IMG/VR virus record: IMGVR_UViG_3300050821_002957
Coordinates: 124,001-188,000 of that record
DNA length: 64,000 nucleotides
Reading direction: 5' to 3' (one strand)
Both the position numbers and the translations under genes were made by a program. Positions 6,209-62,242 of the stretch are shown here, in pieces (the stretch's first letter is position 1; each line of letters opens with the position of its first letter). The notes beneath the pieces are model-generated. The model searched no databases. It saw only the letters and a list, made by a program, of their open reading frames with translations, and was not told where the DNA came from.

Positions 6209-6285
6209 TGGTAGCGGATCTAGGAGTCGAACCTAGTATCTCAAGGTTATGAGTCTTGAATGGTTGTCCGTTCCACTCACCCGCA
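6209..6285 (-). tRNA. tRNA-Met(CAT), initiator-like (1:72 mismatch)
   Basis: Loop CTCATAA, CCA end, U1/U72 mismatch. Confidence 0.85.
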
Positions 6286-7000: not shown

Positions 7001-7135
7001 AGAGCGAACAAATATGTAGGTCTCCGCTTGTAACTACCGCCCGGACGCAATCAATATTACTACTGACTGCGGTATGGAATCGAACCACATCGCCTTTTTT
7101 GCAGAAAGAGAACAGAAACCCAGGCGGCTCACTCT
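7001..7135 (-). ncRNA. Y RNA-like ncRNA, copy 6
   Basis: GUGAGCCG/UUUGUUCGC stem; T arm UGUGG UUCGAUU CCAUA; closed acceptor-like stem; TTGACA/TATTCT and CTAAATA promoters directly upstream. Confidence 0.72.
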
Positions 7136-7175
7136 GACTTATTTAGAATACCACACCCAGTCACAGTGTCAAGTA

Positions 7176-10935: not shown

Positions 10936-11496
10936 CTAAACTCGTTTCACATTGCGACCAGCAAACGTTTCTGTTTGACTGTTGCAATTCGGACATAACA
11001 GCCGAAGATTGTCCAGTCTGTTATCATCCTTCACCCCATTGATATGGTCAAGCACCATCACCAACATTTTTCCGTTCCATTCCGGCTGCTGGCCACAATC
11101 ACTACACTCATTCGCCAGTATACCATCTCGGATCAAACGATTTTTCAAGTGTCCTCGATTGTATGTCGATCCCTCTACCAAAACATTCAACAATGAAACT
11201 GATCGTTCCTCAATATTCGGTACGATTCGACCACACTCAACCGACTTATACCATGATGCCGGATTCATCCCAAATTTGTTAATACACTCCCGAAAAGAAG
11301 CTCCTCTATCAATCTCTTTTTGTACAGCAGTCCAATCATATCGCTGTGCGCCATCACGACCCATAAAGACTATGGACGGATTCTCAGCATGGCGGCGTGC
11401 ATGATAACTAATCGTAGATCGAGCACAACCCAATTCTTTTTCAATCTCTCGATACGAACGTCCTTCTTTCAACAACTGAATAATACGATGCTTCAT
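10936..11496 (-). CDS. HNH homing endonuclease with N-terminal HTH
   Basis: GRSYREIEKELG HTH; LDHINGVKDDNRLDNLRLLCPNCNSQT; CTAAATA-N5-ATG start. Confidence 0.92.
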   Translation of the reverse strand: MKHRIIQLLKEGRSYREIEKELGCARSTISYHARRHAENPSIVFMGRDGAQRYDWTAVQKEIDRGASFRECINKFGMNPASWYKSVECGRIVPNIEERSVSLLNVLVEGSTYNRGHLKNRLIRDGILANECSDCGQQPEWNGKMLVMVLDHINGVKDDNRLDNLRLLCPNCNSQTETFAGRNVKRV

Positions 11497-16062: not shown

Positions 16063-16115
16063 TGCCGGGACGATTTCTCTCCCGGCAGTTAATCTGATGT
16101 CTGTGTTCGTGTCAT
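16063..16115 (-). promoter_or_regulatory. leader mini-ORF MTRTQTSD* (16089-16115) plus 8-bp hairpin (16063-16087)
   Basis: TATAATA-N4-ATG; three ACA codons and a GAT; directly upstream of the Asp, Asp, Thr(TGT) tRNAs. Confidence 0.6.
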
Positions 16116-16353
16116 ACTGTATTATATAGTCTCACACATTTTCCGATCTGTCAACTCTCATCTAACAATTCCAACAAGGTTAGCGCCAAACCAATCGGAC
16201 CCAAAAGAAAAACCACAATGCTCGCACCGATTTGAAATGGCACACTGTAGATGCTCTCAAGATCTGTAAAAGCAAATTTCCGGCCTTCACGACGAGCGAT
16301 CAACCACATGACCACGAAAGTCATACCACCACATGAGAACCACAAGAACCAAT

Positions 16354-57563: not shown

Positions 57564-57819
57564 GGGGTAAGCAATGGCCGATAAAGCTGTAGCAACGAAA
57601 AGAGAGAAACTTACCATCGATCCCCGAGAATTGATGTTGTATGAGCTTCAAAAGGTCCGTAAGACATTCGCAGACGTAGCGGTCCAAGTATCCAAGGATC
57701 TTACGAAAGTGATGCCTACAAACTTGACATAATCCGTCGATGTGCTATCGTGGTGTTGTGAAGTTTCAAACAATGAGCTAGGACAACCTTGTTCATATCT
57801 AGGAAAACAAAAAACAAAC

Positions 57820-58308
57820 ATGAAAAATTTAATTGCATTATTTGTATTGGCATTGGGCACTGTCTTTGCACAGTCCGCAGTACCGCAGAATGAAGTTTTT
57901 GGCAACGTAGGTCTGTCGTTCCCTCGCACGCCTGCAATCACGACCACCGTCAGCGCAACCGCAGGTTATGGTCGGACTCTGGCAAACGAAACCTTTGGCA
58001 GCACTGAAGTGATCGGCACTTATGATTTCACTCGTGCTACCCCGAAGGGCGGCGTTCAGTCTTTCTTGGGTGGCGTGAAGCAAAACTTCAAGAGCACTCT
58101 TCCGGGCATCGTTCCATTCTTGTCGGTCCAAGTCGGTGAGGCAACATTGCTTCGTAAGACCAGCTTTGCAACCGAAGTAGCTGGCGGCGTTCGGTTCACC
58201 AAGCTGTGCCCATTGTTTGGCGTCGATCTTGGCGTCAAGGGTACGAAGGTTGATGACAAGACACCGATGTATGGTGGTGTGTTCGTCGGCCTCTCGAAGA
58301 GCTTCTAG
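57820..58308 (+). CDS. putative outer-membrane beta-barrel protein
   Basis: Signal peptide, amphipathic strands, C-terminal VGLSKSF. Confidence 0.6.
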   Translation: MKNLIALFVLALGTVFAQSAVPQNEVFGNVGLSFPRTPAITTTVSATAGYGRTLANETFGSTEVIGTYDFTRATPKGGVQSFLGGVKQNFKSTLPGIVPFLSVQVGEATLLRKTSFATEVAGGVRFTKLCPLFGVDLGVKGTKVDDKTPMYGGVFVGLSKSF

Positions 58309-58367: not shown

Positions 58368-59060
58368 ATGAAAACTCTGCTAACCGCCCTCGTTTTATTT
58401 GGTGTTGCTGCTTCAGCGCAGACATCGCAAGAAAAGCCGTGCCCAAATGGTGGCTACGGTCCAGATTGCATCGTTCCCGGACTATTGCAACTTCCTTCCG
58501 AAACCACGACCACTCCTAAGTCCGATAAGATTTCTGACGGATCAACATCAAATGATCTGTTCTTCATGGTTGGCTCCGATTTCGACCGTCCTGGTTTGCT
58601 GCCTCGTGCAAATTACAATGTCGGCCTGGGTCACACTTTCTCCTTCTTGACCAATTCTCCTGTTCATTATTTCGGCGATGAAGTTACCGTTGCGTACACT
58701 TACGAAAACGGTGGACCGAAAGGTTTCTGGCATGGTCCTACAAGCACCAGCACTGAAAGCCTTGGTCTGATGAAAAACATCAGCATTCCGCATACGAAGA
58801 AAGTTACTGTCTACACTTGGCCGCAACTCGGTCTTACATCCATTTTTACCGGAAAGCCAGCGACAATACTGGATACAAAAGTGGTTGTTGATGGTGTTCC
58901 TCTTCCTCCCACACAAAATCGTCTGTATGCCGGTTTTGCTATTGGGGCGATCATCCACCTTCCACACAACACGTCCATTTGGATTCAAGAGAGCTACAAC
59001 AAAGTCGTGACGGTGCCGTGGTACACAACGACTTCGATTGGCTATACGATCAGCTTCTAA
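58368..59060 (+). CDS. putative outer-membrane beta-barrel protein
   Basis: Signal peptide, C-terminal IGYTISF beta-signal. Confidence 0.6.
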   Translation: MKTLLTALVLFGVAASAQTSQEKPCPNGGYGPDCIVPGLLQLPSETTTTPKSDKISDGSTSNDLFFMVGSDFDRPGLLPRANYNVGLGHTFSFLTNSPVHYFGDEVTVAYTYENGGPKGFWHGPTSTSTESLGLMKNISIPHTKKVTVYTWPQLGLTSIFTGKPATILDTKVVVDGVPLPPTQNRLYAGFAIGAIIHLPHNTSIWIQESYNKVVTVPWYTTTSIGYTISF

Positions 59061-59214
59061 TGATACTACAATCACTAAAACAATTTTTGGGACGCATTAT
59101 GTTTTAGTCTCCTTGGGATGTTCCCTTCGGTATTTAGTTGCTAGAATATTTCTTCCGGCATAGGAAAATTTTATAAGGTATTGACAGGATACGGGTCTTG
59201 TGCTATAAATAGAG

Positions 59215-59490
59215 TCGTAGCAGATAGTCGAAGTGAACGAAGAACGCTTCTTGGACATGGGTTCAATTCCCATCGGCTCCACCAAAATTCTGATTTTAGG
59301 CATCAGAGAACTTATGGGGCCGCCCCGGTTTCGACAGGATGAGATGTTGCGTAAGCAGGGCTACCGTGGTCCTTGTCCACGTTATCCAGAAGGAATCATA
59401 AACGCTAATGCACCTGCATTTGCTTTCGCTGCCGCTGCCTAAACAGCGCTCGAACGAAGTCGGAGAACTTTGTTAAAGAACTCCCAACAG
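59215..59490 (+). ncRNA. ssrA: two-piece (circularly permuted) tmRNA, tag ANAPAFAFAAAA
   Basis: T arm and CGGCUCCACCA (ends 59284) precede GGGGCCG...GGUUUCGAC (starts 59316); G3.U70 pair; tag ORF 59404-59442; TTGACA/TATAAA promoter upstream. Confidence 0.92.
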
Positions 59491-59521
59491 AAGGCCGGGG
59501 CAACTCGGCCTTTTGCTTTTT
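59491..59521 (+). terminator. intrinsic terminator after the tmRNA
   Basis: aaggccggg-gcaa-ctcggcctt hairpin followed by a T run. Confidence 0.85.
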
Positions 59522-59681
59522 GAAAGGTTGTGTTTATGAGACGACATTTGAAAATGGTCCATCACCACGGCAAACGAGCACTAAAGTCTAAGTACGGACA
59601 GGTGTTCATCATCCTGTGGTTCGTGCCGGAAGCCATTGCACTTTTTGGTTTGATATGGGCTGCATGGCGACACCTTGTAAA

Positions 59682-60032
59682 ATGAAGTTTCTTCTGTTCA
59701 TTCTCTTATTCTTCGCATCAAGCGCCTGGGCCGCAGAGAAGCCTCTTGTCGAAAAATGCTTCAAAGTCCAGTCTCTCATCAAGGCAGATCCAGAGCATTA
59801 TTGGGCTACCTGGAAGAACGCCTGTCCGTACATCATTGACTCGATCTACGTAAACGTCGATTTCAAAGACAAGGCCGGAAGCATTCTTGGACATGGAGTC
59901 TGGTCGCTACATTATGTCAAACCGGGCGAGGGCCGCTACATTCGATTCTCAACTCCATCCTTGACAAGTGACTATTTCTCTGTTATCTTAAAAGAGATTA
60001 CTTTGGACGCTTTCAAAGCTCTACGGTACTAA
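59682..60032 (+). CDS. secreted hypothetical protein
   Basis: Signal peptide MKFLLFILLFFASSAWA. Confidence 0.6.
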   Translation: MKFLLFILLFFASSAWAAEKPLVEKCFKVQSLIKADPEHYWATWKNACPYIIDSIYVNVDFKDKAGSILGHGVWSLHYVKPGEGRYIRFSTPSLTSDYFSVILKEITLDAFKALRY

Positions 60033-60040
60033 ATACGAAC

Positions 60041-60104
60041 ATGGTACGTTTTTCCACCATCACGACAAGCACTACCACGACCGTCTAGTTCCTCTAGAAC
60101 GGTC
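60041..60104 (+). promoter_or_regulatory. thrL-like leader peptide MVRFSTITTSTTTTV* (60041-60088) with hairpin (60079-60104)
   Basis: 7 Thr in 10 codons; CTAAATA-N5-ATG; 35 nt upstream of two tRNA-Thr genes. Confidence 0.8.
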
Positions 60105-60123
60105 CACTTCCCATTTCAATTAA

Positions 60124-60199
60124 GCCGAATTAGCTCAGTTAGCAGAGCGCCGCCCTCGTAATGCGGAGGTCATGAGTGCAACTCTCATATTCGGCTCCA
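60124..60199 (+). tRNA. tRNA-Thr(CGT)
   Basis: Loop CTCGTAA, CCA; atypical T loop TGCAACT. Confidence 0.9.
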
Positions 60200-60202
60200 A
60201 AT

Positions 60203-60276
60203 GCCGCCTTATTTCAATGGTAGACTCTATCTCTGGTACAGATAGGATTTGGGTTCGATTCCCAAAGGCGGCTCCA
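60203..60276 (+). tRNA. tRNA-Thr(GGT)
   Basis: tatct-CTGGTAC-agata anticodon arm, CCA. Confidence 0.9.
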
Positions 60277-60330: not shown

Positions 60331-60957
60331 ATGACACGCAGCGAAGCCGGAAGGTTAGGTGGACAAATTATAGGGCAAAGAAATCGTGATGAGTCGTTTG
60401 CTCGATATTATGCAAACCCAAAATATTGTTTCCAGTGCGGATCGATCATTAAAATTCCACTGGGTAAGAGATACCAGTCCATTGCAAACAAGAAATTTTG
60501 TACGTCAAGTTGTTCGGCAACGTTTAACAATGCACAACGAGGACGGAAGGAACGGCTATGCAAGCGATGTAGCGCTGTCATCTCAAATTCCAACAAAGAA
60601 TTTTGCAGCCATGTTTGTAGCAATCAATTTCGATACGAAAGATTCATTAAAGAGTGGCGAGCCGGGGACACATCAAAGGCTTCAACTTGCGACGGACTAT
60701 CCATCAGCAACCATATCCGTCGCTATCTGTTCGATAAGTATGAATCGAAGTGCTGTAAGTGTGGCTGGAACCGAGTCAATTCGGTAACTGGAAGAATTCC
60801 TCTAGTCGTCAATCACATCGATGGGCACTCGGAGAATAATTTAGAAAGCAACCTGGAGCTTATCTGCCCATCTTGCGATAGCCTAACGCCGACCTACATG
60901 GCTCTGAACATTGGTCACGGTAGGAAGGCTCGTTACCGGGCAAAGGGTCCAAAATAA
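60331..60957 (+). CDS. HNH homing endonuclease
   Basis: KFCTSSC repeats; NHIDGHSENNLESNLELICPSC. Confidence 0.9.
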   Translation: MTRSEAGRLGGQIIGQRNRDESFARYYANPKYCFQCGSIIKIPLGKRYQSIANKKFCTSSCSATFNNAQRGRKERLCKRCSAVISNSNKEFCSHVCSNQFRYERFIKEWRAGDTSKASTCDGLSISNHIRRYLFDKYESKCCKCGWNRVNSVTGRIPLVVNHIDGHSENNLESNLELICPSCDSLTPTYMALNIGHGRKARYRAKGPK

Positions 60958-61024: not shown

Positions 61025-62242
61025 GTGCAACAAACTAGAACATCGACGACTTTTCGTGTTAAACATACTCCGTGGAATAAAGGTAAGAAGACCGGAGTTG
61101 GTGGACCTAAAGGGAGAAAATGGACAACAGAAGAGCGTCAACGAAGTTCTGAGGTACGGAAAGGACAAACCCCTTGGAATAAAGGGAAGACGGGAATTGG
61201 TGTGTGGTCCTCACAGCGCCGCAAACAACATACCGAAAAGATGAAAAAACGGTGGGCTGTTTCCCTGCAAACACGAGATGAAAAATTATCGGTTTCTATG
61301 AAGAAAGTTCTATCAACAGTGGATTACACTTTCATTAGTCACTATAGAGGAATGACCGGAAAGTGGCCGCTCGTCCGAATCATCTACAAGTGTACAAAAG
61401 GACACAAAATTGATGCTTCATGGCCTGCTGTTAAACGAGCCATAGAAATTCGTGGATCAAATTGTCGCTTGTGTTCAATTCAGGTAAAACGAGAACATCC
61501 TTTTCCTGGTAGAATACACATAAAACCGTTTTCTACATATGCCTTACTATTCAAAGAAGCAGGAGCAACTCTTCTTTCAATTGAATACAATCCTAAAAAG
61601 GAATTTCATTATGTGTGTCGGTGTGGTAAACGTTGTAAAACGACTCACTACCAACGTTACCAGTGTCGAGAGTGTGGAAACAAAGCCGGGGCACAAAAAA
61701 ATCGAGAATTTATTAGACCTATAGGATTAGCCGCTCCTGGTCATCTTGGACAAAAGCGTGCTTCTAGACTCGAACAACTTCAAGCAGAATTTTTAGCAGC
61801 CGGATGTAAGATAACAAAATATGTAAATTGCAAGCGAATGTACTACATTTGTTCATGTGGAGGGTTTGGTGTTTCCACTTTGTGGAATTGGCGTCGGGGC
61901 GCACGATGTTCAAAATGTTCGTCTAGACGACAAGGCAAACAGAAGTCGTTTAAAGAAATTCTAGCCACATTCTTGAAGGCTGGATGTGTCCCTTTGTTCG
62001 ATCAATATCTGAATGCTCATGATCCTTTACGATTTCGTTGTCGATGTGGTCGCATTGCCCAGAAAGGCTTCCAAATGTTCGAGCATCATCCGCACTGCAT
62101 TCATTGTGGGCGAGAAATCCAAGCCCAACAGGGACAGCGTATCACTAAAATTAGAAAATTCTATCAAGAGGCAATTACTAAAATCAATGTTTCCCGAGAA
62201 TTGAAACGTGTCCTGAAAGGGGTCAAGAAGATGGGACCATGA
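61025..62242 (+). CDS. NUMOD3 / zinc-ribbon repeat DNA-binding protein (homing-endonuclease related)
   Basis: PWNKGK twice and repeated CxCG...CxxC; no clear catalytic domain. Confidence 0.65.
   Translation: MQQTRTSTTFRVKHTPWNKGKKTGVGGPKGRKWTTEERQRSSEVRKGQTPWNKGKTGIGVWSSQRRKQHTEKMKKRWAVSLQTRDEKLSVSMKKVLSTVDYTFISHYRGMTGKWPLVRIIYKCTKGHKIDASWPAVKRAIEIRGSNCRLCSIQVKREHPFPGRIHIKPFSTYALLFKEAGATLLSIEYNPKKEFHYVCRCGKRCKTTHYQRYQCRECGNKAGAQKNREFIRPIGLAAPGHLGQKRASRLEQLQAEFLAAGCKITKYVNCKRMYYICSCGGFGVSTLWNWRRGARCSKCSSRRQGKQKSFKEILATFLKAGCVPLFDQYLNAHDPLRFRCRCGRIAQKGFQMFEHHPHCIHCGREIQAQQGQRITKIRKFYQEAITKINVSRELKRVLKGVKKMGP

What the first reader, a model, noticed from the sequence alone, without database searches (positions are those of the whole stretch)
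60029..60276. thrL-like attenuator controlling two tRNA-Thr genes
MVRFSTITTSTTTTV* closely resembles E. coli ThrL ([15 protein letters not shown]...). Five of its 7 Thr codons are ACC or ACG, matching the GGT and CGT tRNAs 35 nt downstream. A strong hairpin (gaccgtctag/ctagaacggtc) overlaps the stop codon and is followed by a pyrimidine-rich stretch rather than a U-tract. Control may therefore be Rho-dependent or act on tRNA processing instead of using a classic intrinsic terminator.
Basis: partly seen in the sequence, partly recalled or inferred. Interest (0 to 1): 0.88.

Follow-up and report, generated by a model that had tools for sequence, protein, structure and literature searches.

The report
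Threonine-codon leader before phage tRNA-Thr genes
A clade of ~400 kb soil phages keeps a tiny threonine-rich reading frame, ending inside a conserved RNA hairpin, directly upstream of its two threonine tRNA genes, which looks like a built-in sensor that adjusts the phage's tRNA-Thr output to Thr-tRNA supply, an arrangement I found no precedent for.

Summary
A 15-codon ORF (60041-60088, MVRFSTITTSTTTTV*) has 7 Thr codons. Its stop lies in a hairpin (60079-60104). A G-free pyrimidine-rich spacer and tRNA-Thr(CGU) plus tRNA-Thr(GGU) follow. It is the only Thr run of this density in all six frames of the window.

The window is part of a 405 kb T4-like jumbo phage contig from soil. Six further related phage contigs (RlaP anchor 65-79% identical) carry the same tRNA-Thr pair. 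All six have the same module: an ATG-started ORF with a Thr-rich 3' end, a stop at hairpin nt 8-10 in 6 of 7 loci, two covarying stem pairs and a G-poor spacer. Upstream genes and the tRNAs themselves have diverged. Relatives without the tRNA pair lack the ORF, and no other tRNA has such a leader.

In one relative the ATG sits at leaderless distance from a strong promoter. In two relatives unrelated in-frame insertions lengthen the ORF without breaking it.

It is not homologous to thrL. It has no U-tract terminator and no conserved antiterminator.

Best reading (about 0.5): ribosome-mediated sensing of Thr-tRNA supply that controls read-through into the tRNA genes, by hairpin occlusion and/or Rho. 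The function is inferred, not shown.

The parts
59961..59989 (+). Promoter-like site (TTGACA, 17 nt, TATCTT, preceded by TG) inside the 3' end of the upstream 116-aa ORF. It would give a 5' UTR of about 45 nt before the leader ATG.
   Evidence: The same TTGACA-17-TATAGT site is present in the closest relative L038. The type matches about 20 other TTGACA-N16-18-TAnnnT sites in front of genes in the window.
60030..60040 (+). A/U-rich motif TAAATACGAAC directly before the ATG, with no Shine-Dalgarno sequence.
   Evidence: Shared with L038 (TAAATACGACC) and L041 (TAAATACGATC), and similar to L042 (TAAATAGAGTC), where it is part of the -10 region of a leaderless promoter.
60041..60088 (+). Leader mini-ORF of 15 codons plus TAG: MVRFSTITTSTTTTV*.
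   Evidence: Homologous ORFs occur in 6 related loci.
60056..60082 (+). Run of control codons: 7 Thr among codons 6-14 (ACC ATC ACG ACA AGC ACT ACC ACG ACC). It includes the clade-conserved core ACTAnCAnGACnG.
60079..60104 (+). Hairpin of 10 bp with one bulge and a 5-nt loop. It begins in the last Thr codon and contains the stop codon at hairpin nt 8-10.
   Evidence: The outer 6 bp are conserved in 7 of 7 loci with 2 covarying pairs, and 97.6% of cells are paired.
60105..60123 (+). G-free, pyrimidine-rich spacer between the hairpin and the tRNA. No U-run is adjacent to the stem.
   Evidence: The spacers of all loci have 0-1 G. The whole leader is in the top 0.8% of 80-nt windows for C-over-G excess.
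60124..60199 (+). tRNA-Thr, anticodon CGU (reads ACG), with CCA encoded.
   Evidence: ARAGORN; Rfam tRNA, 58.4 bits.
60203..60276 (+). tRNA-Thr, anticodon GGU (reads ACC and ACU), with CCA encoded.
   Evidence: ARAGORN; Rfam tRNA, 52.2 bits.

Best explanation
This is a conserved cis-regulatory leader of the phage's tRNA-Thr(CGU)-tRNA-Thr(GGU) transcription unit. A short ORF is translated at the 5' end of the precursor. Its last ~10 codons are mostly Thr and run directly into a hairpin that contains the stop codon. The inferred mechanism follows. When Thr-tRNA that decodes ACC/ACG/ACU is plentiful, the ribosome finishes and leaves. The hairpin then forms and the C-rich, G-poor leader is left bare. 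Transcription into the tRNA genes is reduced, by hairpin-dependent pausing or termination and/or by Rho loading on the exposed leader. When Thr-tRNA is scarce (host pool exhausted, uncharged or damaged), the ribosome stalls on the invariant ACT-ACN-ANG-ACN codons. It then physically covers the 5' arm of the hairpin and the C-rich tract, and RNA polymerase reads on into the two tRNA-Thr genes. The outcome is negative feedback: the phage makes more tRNA-Thr when it is needed. Shown: the anatomy, its conservation, its linkage to the tRNA-Thr pair, the covariation of the hairpin, and the fixed phase between ORF and hairpin. Inferred: translation of the ORF, stalling, the direction of control, and the termination factor.
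For: (1) 7 of 7 independent loci with the tRNA-Thr pair have the module. These are the window, L004, L037, L038, L041, L042 and L044 (L045 is a second copy of L044). The peptides are MVRFSTITTSTTTTV, MNITFNTTRTTTTV, MFLTFTTRTTSKTAGY, MLITLTSTSTTKTA, MLTFLTSTSTTKTA...KLNITFSTTSTTTTV and ...AAMRFFSTSTNKTA. (2) The module stays with the tRNAs whatever lies upstream: tmRNA directly, a 116-aa ORF, or a HAD hydrolase. It is missing from L013, L015 and L016, which have the tmRNA but not the tRNA pair. (3) Thr is kept with synonymous variation: one aligned column holds ACA, ACC and ACG, and another holds ACC and ACG. (4) Several signs point to translation. Every locus has an ATG. In L042 the ATG lies 6-7 nt after a TTGACA-17-TATAAAT promoter identical in its -10 region to the clade's tmRNA promoter, the same geometry as many leaderless genes of this phage. 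In L041 a 10/12 promoter ends 18 nt before the ATG. In L037 and L038, mutually unrelated inserts of about 110-150 nt keep the frame open down to the same stop. (5) The outer 6 bp of the hairpin are present in 7 of 7 loci, with C-G<->G-C and C-G<->U-A compensatory changes. Only 2 of 500 shuffles reach the observed pairing, and slid controls pair at 12-55% against 97.6%. The stop codon sits at hairpin nt 8-10 in 6 of 7 loci although the stems differ in length. (6) The leader is C-rich and G-poor, in the top 0.8% of windows, and the spacers hold 0-1 G, which is rut-like composition. (7) No other tRNA in the window, L046 or L047 has a cognate-codon leader, so this is specific and not a general by-product of tRNA flanks. 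(8) A contig from a soil metatranscriptome library spans 60059-60206: the distal leader, the hairpin, the spacer, the first tRNA and the start of the second. Its depth is about twice that of neighbouring genes, consistent with a read-through precursor.
Against: No Shine-Dalgarno sequence precedes the ATG in any locus, and there is no direct evidence of translation. The hairpin is never followed by a U-run at the stem and is never scored as terminator-like. No conserved alternative (antiterminator) pairing exists. A ribosome reaching the stop also melts the hairpin, so the simple occlusion model needs a timing element, such as a pause or Rho, that is not demonstrated. L037 keeps only 3 Thr in its last 14 sense codons and has an HNH gene inserted between the hairpin and the tRNAs. 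The conserved core is also conserved as plain nucleotides, so an RNA-level function with an incidental ORF is not excluded. Only three hairpin haplotypes exist, so the covariation rests on few events. The RNA-library contig could derive from contaminating DNA, and it does not cover the first 18 nt of the ORF. The host is unknown.
Confidence: 0.5

Rival explanations
1. This is an RNA-level element only. The conserved hairpin plus the C-rich single strand would be a 5'-leader feature of the tRNA precursor, such as a protective or processing hairpin, an RNA polymerase pause site, or a constitutive Rho or nuclease entry site. On this reading the Thr ORF is a by-product of an AC-rich sequence, and nothing senses Thr-tRNA.
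For: The core ACTAnCAnGACnG and the hairpin are conserved at nucleotide level. No SD is present. The other two frames of so short a segment are also open. The composition is strongly C>G. The metatranscriptome contig shows the leader attached to the tRNA.
Against: An ATG is kept at 13-16 codons from the stop in 5 of 7 loci. In the other 2 loci the frame stays open through unrelated inserts. L042 has leaderless-promoter geometry. Thr is kept through synonymous changes. The stop codon keeps a fixed position in hairpins of different design. The phage's other tRNA transcription units need no such element.
Confidence: 0.2
2. The mini-ORF is translated, but it serves a purpose other than Thr sensing. 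One possibility is an anti-polarity device: a ribosome on the 5' end of an otherwise untranslated tRNA transcript keeps Rho or RNases off, so efficient translation would increase tRNA output. Another possibility is that the Thr/Ser-rich peptide acts in its own right.
For: The evidence for translation is the same as in the best explanation. T4-type phages are known to lose distal early transcripts to Rho when translation is blocked (my own textbook knowledge, not retrieved here). The clade has T4-like genes gp32, gp59 and the late coactivator.
Against: Any ORF would serve against polarity, yet Thr enrichment is conserved specifically before tRNA-Thr genes. Other tRNA units in the same phages start directly after their promoters. 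A 14-aa low-complexity peptide whose N-terminus varies freely, and which tolerates 36-52 extra unrelated residues, is unlikely to be a folded effector. No family hit was found.
Confidence: 0.15
3. Decaying remnant or chance: the ORF is the leftover 3' end of a once longer gene (as in L037 and L038), next to a terminator-like hairpin of that gene, with no present function.
For: In L038 and L037 the Thr tail is the C-terminus of 66-aa and 50-aa ORFs. The window looks like L038 with about 150 nt missing after a shared TAAATACGAnCAT motif.
Against: The N-terminal parts of the two long ORFs are unrelated to each other and to any family, so they look like independent insertions, not an ancestral gene. 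The tail, the hairpin and the phase are kept in 7 lineages whose tRNAs and spacers have diverged more than the core has. The hairpin does not look like the phage's real terminators, for example the tmRNA terminator with its T-run at 59488-59515.
Confidence: 0.08
4. Direct tRNA binding: the single-stranded Thr codons (for example UACCA, complementary to nt 33-37 of a GGU anticodon loop) would pair with tRNA-Thr anticodon loops and affect folding or processing of the precursor, in the manner of a minimal T-box specifier.
For: Only the complementarity inherent in codons and the single-stranded state of the core in all predicted folds.
Against: There is no T-box or other Rfam match. There is no Stem I-like platform and no T-box sequence to read the acceptor end. 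The element is far too small. The ORF features are left unexplained.
Confidence: 0.03

Closest known systems
E. coli thr operon leader (thrL attenuator; class of ribosome-mediated transcription attenuators thr/his/leu/phe/trp/ilv)
   Same: It has a very short ORF at the 5' end of the transcript, with clustered codons for the amino acid relevant to the downstream genes, followed by a GC-rich hairpin. The peptide composition is alike: ThrL has 8 Thr and 4 Ile in 21 residues.
   Different: The genes controlled would be tRNAs, not biosynthetic enzymes. The stop codon lies inside the hairpin, whereas thrL's terminator starts about 20 nt after its stop. There is no U-run, whereas thrL's terminator ends in 9 T. 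There is no 1:2/2:3/3:4 set of alternative helices. There is no sequence or structure homology. The context is a phage.
Rho-dependent leader-peptide attenuators (E. coli tnaC-tnaA; Salmonella mgtL/mgtP and corL leaders). Named from my own knowledge.
   Same: A leader ORF whose ribosome occupancy decides whether a C-rich, G-poor stretch at or after the stop is accessible. No intrinsic terminator is present. The composition here is in the top 0.8% for C>G.
   Different: Only 65-90 nt are available before the highly structured tRNA. The stall would be caused by cognate tRNA shortage, not by a ligand-arrested peptide (tnaC). Rho dependence is untested and the host is unknown.
pyrBI-type attenuation (a leader ORF runs into the attenuator hairpin, and a closely following ribosome prevents hairpin formation). 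Named from my own knowledge.
   Same: The ORF physically overlaps the hairpin, so a ribosome can block it directly without a separate antiterminator.
   Different: pyrBI senses UTP through polymerase pausing, has a canonical U-tract terminator, and has no cognate-codon run.
Phage tRNA gene clusters (T4, T5 and jumbo phages)
   Same: tRNA genes are clustered with homing endonuclease genes and small ORFs, and are transcribed from sigma70-like early promoters. The CGU-then-GGU tRNA-Thr pair also occurs in unrelated phages.
   Different: In those other phages, and for all other tRNAs of this phage clade, no cognate-codon leader ORF precedes the tRNAs. Literature searches found no described leader-peptide control of any tRNA gene.

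Membership tests
Ribosome-mediated transcription attenuators of the thr/his/leu/phe/trp class | Short leader ORF with clustered regulatory codons cognate to the controlled function | tested here: met
   7 Thr in 15 codons, the only such run in six frames of 64 kb. The relatives have 6-7 Thr in 5 loci and 3 in L037, counted over the last 14 sense codons.
Ribosome-mediated transcription attenuators of the thr/his/leu/phe/trp class | Leader ORF conserved with the regulated genes in related genomes | tested here: met
   Present in 7 of 7 loci with the tRNA-Thr pair and absent from 3 relatives without the pair.
Ribosome-mediated transcription attenuators of the thr/his/leu/phe/trp class | Functional translation start for the leader | tested here: inconclusive
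   Every locus has an ATG. L042 has leaderless-promoter geometry and L041 has a promoter 18 nt upstream. No SD is present in any locus, and there are no ribosome data.
Ribosome-mediated transcription attenuators of the thr/his/leu/phe/trp class | Intrinsic terminator (GC-rich hairpin immediately followed by a U-run) between the leader ORF and the regulated genes | tested here: not met
   The hairpin is present (dG -9.5 to -12.7) but no U-run abuts the stem. It is never called by the terminator scan in the window, L041, L042 or L044. Compare the thrL terminator with its 9 T.
Ribosome-mediated transcription attenuators of the thr/his/leu/phe/trp class | Mutually exclusive antiterminator helix whose formation depends on the ribosome's position | tested here: not met
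   Folds of 7 leaders share only the hairpin that overlaps the stop. The upstream helices differ between loci.
Ribosome-mediated transcription attenuators of the thr/his/leu/phe/trp class | Downstream expression responds to charged cognate tRNA | not testable with these tools
   This needs reporter, starvation or in vitro transcription experiments.
Rfam Thr_leader or any curated RNA family | Match to the covariance model | tested here: not met
   No match to any of 4227 Rfam families at E<=10 over 59950-60130.
Rho-dependent leader-peptide attenuators (tnaC, mgtL type) | C-rich, G-poor, weakly structured rut-like region at or after the leader stop | tested here: inconclusive
   The composition fits: C 27-35%, G 12-16%, top 0.8% of windows, and spacers with 0-1 G. 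However, only 65-90 nt are available and a stable hairpin sits in the middle.
Rho-dependent leader-peptide attenuators (tnaC, mgtL type) | Termination abolished by Rho inhibition or rho mutation | not testable with these tools
   This needs bicyclomycin or in vitro Rho assays. The host is unknown.
Translational attenuation (erm/cat leader type) | The regulated hairpin sequesters the ribosome-binding site of the downstream coding gene | tested here: not met
   The downstream genes are tRNAs, starting 20-43 nt after the stop in 6 of 7 loci.
T-box riboswitch | Stem I with a specifier loop plus a T-box antiterminator that reads the tRNA acceptor end | tested here: not met
   No Rfam match. The element is only 65-90 nt long with a single hairpin.

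The most novel reading that the evidence does not exclude
This is the first known case, in a virus or a cell, in which ribosome stalling at cognate codons of a leader ORF gauges a specific aminoacyl-tRNA pool and feeds back on transcription or maturation of the tRNA genes themselves. It would use a minimal terminator-less design: the stop codon lies inside the hairpin, and the Thr-codon run doubles as a C-rich Rho or pause platform. It would give jumbo phages an on-demand supply of tRNA-Thr, for example when host tRNA-Thr is depleted or cleaved during infection.
Probability: 0.4. Interest if true: 0.85.

Novelty: new variant of a known kind. Interest (0 to 1): 0.72.

Why it matters
Leader-peptide attenuation is a textbook mechanism, but it is known for amino-acid biosynthesis and a few transport or stress operons. 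It is not known for tRNA genes, and not for phages. Why large phages carry tRNAs is still debated: codon-usage matching, replacement of a degraded host pool, or escape from anticodon nucleases. A phage tRNA unit that appears wired to sense Thr-tRNA supply would argue for demand-driven compensation, and it would make that question testable with one small cassette. The design is unusually compact, about 85 nt with one hairpin and no U-tract. It could therefore also inform how ribosome position is coupled to RNA polymerase or Rho without an antiterminator. It could also provide a natural tRNA-pool sensor as a genetic part.

Tried and rejected
- **Pattern scans of IMG/VR.** I scanned with the back-translated leader, the nucleotide core, a tmRNA 3' motif and a tRNA-Thr(CGU) anticodon arm. 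These found only the window's own contig and L004, plus coding low-complexity Thr/His repeats and unrelated tRNA arrays without a leader. IMG/VR holds only two members of the clade. The useful relatives came from RlaP-anchored look-ups.
- **General cognate-codon leaders on the phage's tRNAs.** This idea was rejected. None of the other 11 tRNAs in the window, nor those in L046 and L047, has one.
- **Leaderless mini-ORF before the tRNA-Asp unit.** MTRTQTSD* plus a hairpin (about 16064-16090, minus strand; three ACA codons, with tRNA-Thr(UGU) in the same unit) looked like a second case. It is not conserved: in L047 and L046 the tRNAs follow their promoters directly.
- **Codon-anticodon matching.** Leader Thr codons are ACG 17, ACC 14, ACT 8 and ACA 3, against an ACA background of 17%. 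This is a trend only, and the loci are not independent.
- **Minus-strand coding.** Gene callers placed minus-strand genes over the element in L037 and L038. The minus frame is closed in the window (21-aa ORF only), so this is rejected.
- **Minihelix or tRNA remnant with 3' CCA.** The bases after the stem read CA in 5 of 7 loci and TT or TC in the other 2, and the stems are 6-10 bp. Rejected.
- **Remembered Phe-rich leader before E. coli pheV.** This was a lead from my own memory. The genome shows a promoter directly before the tRNA and no such ORF, and the literature gives a 3-4 nt leader (PMC7049720). Rejected.
- **Genome-contig scan for RlaP relatives.** It found nothing.
- **More distant RlaP relatives.** L048, L051 and L052 have no tRNAs in reach. 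Two look-ups returned no DNA.

Full report
**What is in the window**

The window is part of IMGVR_UViG_3300050821_002957, a 405 kb phage contig from soil. It carries 14 tRNA genes, a permuted tmRNA, DNA and RNA ligases and an RlaP nucleotidyltransferase. Relatives show T4-type genes gp32, gp59 and endonuclease VII.

At 60041-60088 the + strand reads a 15-codon ORF, MVRFSTITTSTTTTV*, with 7 Thr codons: ACC x3, ACG x2, ACA and ACT. A hairpin at 60079-60104 starts in the last Thr codon and holds the TAG at its nt 8-10. It has 10 bp and one bulge, and a dG of -12.5. A 19-nt spacer without a single G follows. Then come tRNA-Thr(CGU) at 60124-60199 and tRNA-Thr(GGU) at 60203-60276.

A 12-codon window with at least 7 Thr occurs once in all six frames of the 64 kb, and it is here. 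A promoter-like site (TTGACA-17-TATCTT with TG) lies at 59961-59989. It is of the same type as about 20 sites in front of other genes of the phage. Many of those place an ATG 6 nt after the -10 element, which means leaderless mRNAs.

**Is it conserved?**

Direct pattern scans of IMG/VR found only the contig itself and one relative. I therefore used the RlaP gene, 3 kb upstream, as an anchor and fetched contigs that encode its homologues.

Six independent relatives, with RlaP 65-79% identical, carry a tRNA-Thr(CGU)+tRNA-Thr(GGU) pair downstream of the tmRNA. Every one has a Thr-rich ORF ending in a hairpin just upstream:

| Locus | Leader peptide | Notes |
|---|---|---|
| L042 | MNITFNTTRTTTTV* | leaderless promoter geometry |
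| L041 | MFLTFTTRTTSKTAGY* | promoter ends 18 nt before the ATG |
| L004 | MLITLTSTSTTKTA* | follows the tmRNA directly |
| L044 (= L045) | MLTFLTSTSTTKTA* | follows the tmRNA directly |
| L038 | ...KLNITFSTTSTTTTV* | 66-aa ORF |
| L037 | ...AAMRFFSTSTNKTA* | 50-aa ORF |

The upstream neighbour differs between loci. It is the tmRNA directly in L004, L044 and L037, a 116-aa secreted-type ORF in the window and L038, and a HAD hydrolase in L041. The module stays with the tRNAs in all cases. Three relatives with the tmRNA but no tRNA-Thr pair at that place (L013, L015, L016) have no Thr ORF there. The tRNAs themselves and the spacers have diverged more than this core has.

**Evidence that the ORF is read as an ORF**

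- All seven loci have an ATG.
- In L042 the ATG lies 6-7 nt after TTGACA-17-TATAAAT. That -10 region (TATAAATAGAGTC) is identical to the one in the clade's tmRNA promoter. The geometry is the same as in the phage's many leaderless genes.
- In L041 a 10/12 promoter ends 18 nt before the ATG.
- L004 and L037 share the same ATG just after the tmRNA's last hairpin. L037 has about 108 extra nt, and these keep the frame down to the same stop. L038 has about 150 extra nt relative to the window, also in frame.
- The two extensions are unrelated to each other and to any family. They look like independent insertions that were tolerated only in frame.
- Thr is kept through synonymous change: one aligned column holds ACA, ACC and ACG.
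- Against translation: no locus has a Shine-Dalgarno sequence, and there are no ribosome data.

**The hairpin**

The outer six pairs are present in 7 of 7 loci. Two pairs covary: C-G to G-C in three sequences, and C-G to U-A in two. In total 97.6% of cells are paired. Only 2 of 500 shuffles reach this, and slid registers pair at 12-55%.

The inner parts differ. Some loci have four more pairs and a 5-nt loop, one has a second small helix, and others have only a GNRA-type tetraloop. Even so, the stop codon sits at hairpin nt 8-10 in six of seven loci. This fixed phase between reading frame and structure is the strongest hint that translation and the hairpin interact.

The hairpin is not a canonical terminator. 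No U-run abuts the stem, and the terminator scan never calls it. The phage's tmRNA does end in a textbook terminator at 59488-59515. No alternative helix is shared among the leaders. No Rfam family matches.

The whole leader is C-rich and G-poor, in the top 0.8% of 80-nt windows, and the spacers have 0-1 G. That is the composition expected of a Rho loading site.

**Transcription**

One contig from a soil metatranscriptome library (X3) covers 60059-60206. It contains the distal leader, the hairpin, the spacer, the first tRNA and the start of the second. Its depth is 6.2, against 2-3.7 for neighbouring genes. Another RNA library (X5) holds the tmRNA.

If this is RNA and not carried-over DNA, the hairpin does not stop all transcription and unprocessed precursor exists. 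It says nothing about regulation.

**Specificity**

No other tRNA of the window or of L046 and L047 has a cognate-codon leader.

A leaderless mini-ORF plus hairpin before the window's tRNA-Asp unit looked like a second case. It reads MTRTQTSD*, has three ACA codons, and tRNA-Thr(UGU) lies in the same unit. It is absent from relatives.

ACA makes up 3 of 42 leader Thr codons, against 17% in long ORFs of the phage.

**Most likely mechanism**

The anatomy fits a minimal ribosome-mediated attenuator. A ribosome stalled on the invariant ACT-ACN-ANG-ACN codons covers the 5' arm of the hairpin and much of the C-rich leader. A ribosome that terminates and leaves exposes both. Hairpin-dependent pausing or termination, and/or Rho, would then limit transcription into the tRNA genes when Thr-tRNA is abundant, and release it when Thr-tRNA is short.

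I give this about 0.5. Within it, the termination factor is open. The rivals are:

| Rival | Confidence |
|---|---|
| RNA-only processing or stability element with an incidental ORF | 0.2 |
| Translated ORF acting against polarity, or as a peptide, without Thr sensing | 0.15 |
| Gene remnant | 0.08 |
| Direct tRNA pairing | 0.03 |

**Comparison with what is known**

The element works like the thr/his/leu/phe leader attenuators in logic. It fails their membership test on the terminator, the antiterminator and homology. E. coli thrL, read from the genome, has its stop about 20 nt before a hairpin that ends in nine T.

It resembles tnaC- or mgtL-type Rho-dependent leaders in lacking an intrinsic terminator and in composition. 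It resembles pyrBI in having the ORF run into the hairpin. Both comparisons rest on my own knowledge.

Searches of the literature found no leader-peptide control of tRNA genes, in phages or in cells. A remembered lead about E. coli pheV proved wrong. I therefore rate it a new variant of a known kind.

**Verdict**

Noticed in passing
window 59192-59533 (Rfam core 59223-59442), + strand; also L004, L013, L015, L016, L037, L038, L041, L042, L044: The phage encodes a permuted (two-piece type) tmRNA with its own TTGACA...TGCTATAAAT promoter and, in the window, a canonical terminator. Tag peptides differ between relatives (ANAPAFAFAAAA, ANNFALPVAA, ATETFALPVAA, ANSYEYALPLAA and others). A metatranscriptome contig covers it at 100% identity. 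Permuted tmRNAs and these tag endings suggest an alphaproteobacterial-type host.
   Followed up: partly
window, about 20 sites, e.g. 27964, 36000, 52208, 56039 (+) and 25365 (-): Many genes are preceded by TTGACA-N16-18-TAnnnT, with the ATG only 6 nt after the -10 element (consensus ...ggttcATG). There is often a conserved GATACATCTA just upstream of the -35 element. The phage seems to rely heavily on leaderless mRNAs.
   Followed up: partly
window about 16064-16135, minus strand: The tRNA-Asp/tRNA-Asp/tRNA-Thr(UGU) unit starts with a TTGACA...TATATAAT promoter. A leaderless 8-codon ORF follows (MTRTQTSD*, all three Thr codons ACA), and then a GC-rich hairpin. The ORF and hairpin are absent in relatives L046 and L047, so they are probably not functional.
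   Followed up: yes
window 60331-60957 and 61025-62242 (+); 10936-11496 (-); L037 about 11060-11285: HNH homing-endonuclease genes sit next to or between tRNA genes. In L037 one has inserted between the leader hairpin and the tRNA-Thr pair.
   Followed up: partly
L015 6001-8031 and L016 5998-8082; L046 1416-3347: In two relatives the RlaP gene is interrupted by about 350 extra codons, and the protein matches in two pieces, which looks like an intein. A relative's ABC-type ATPase carries Hom_end_hint/LAGLIDADG hits, another likely intein.
   Followed up: no
window 6212-6285 (-) and about 7060-7135 (-): Rfam finds a 14th tRNA at 6212-6285 (39.6 bits) that ARAGORN missed. Downstream of the promoter at 7172 (-) there is a stretch with a perfect T-arm-like GGTTCGATTCC, but it matches no tRNA model and may be a decayed tRNA.
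   Followed up: partly
L046 14780-15296: A relative of this phage encodes a translation initiation factor IF3 homologue (IF3_N and IF3_C). This adds to the translation-related load of the clade (tRNAs, tmRNA, RNA ligase, RlaP).
   Followed up: no
window 57742-58308, 58368-59060, 59682-60032 (+): Three small ORFs with signal-peptide-like N-termini and no family match lie between RlaP and the leader. Metatranscriptome contigs cover the first two at 100% identity. The third (116 aa) is shared only with L038 and separates the tmRNA from the leader.
   Followed up: no
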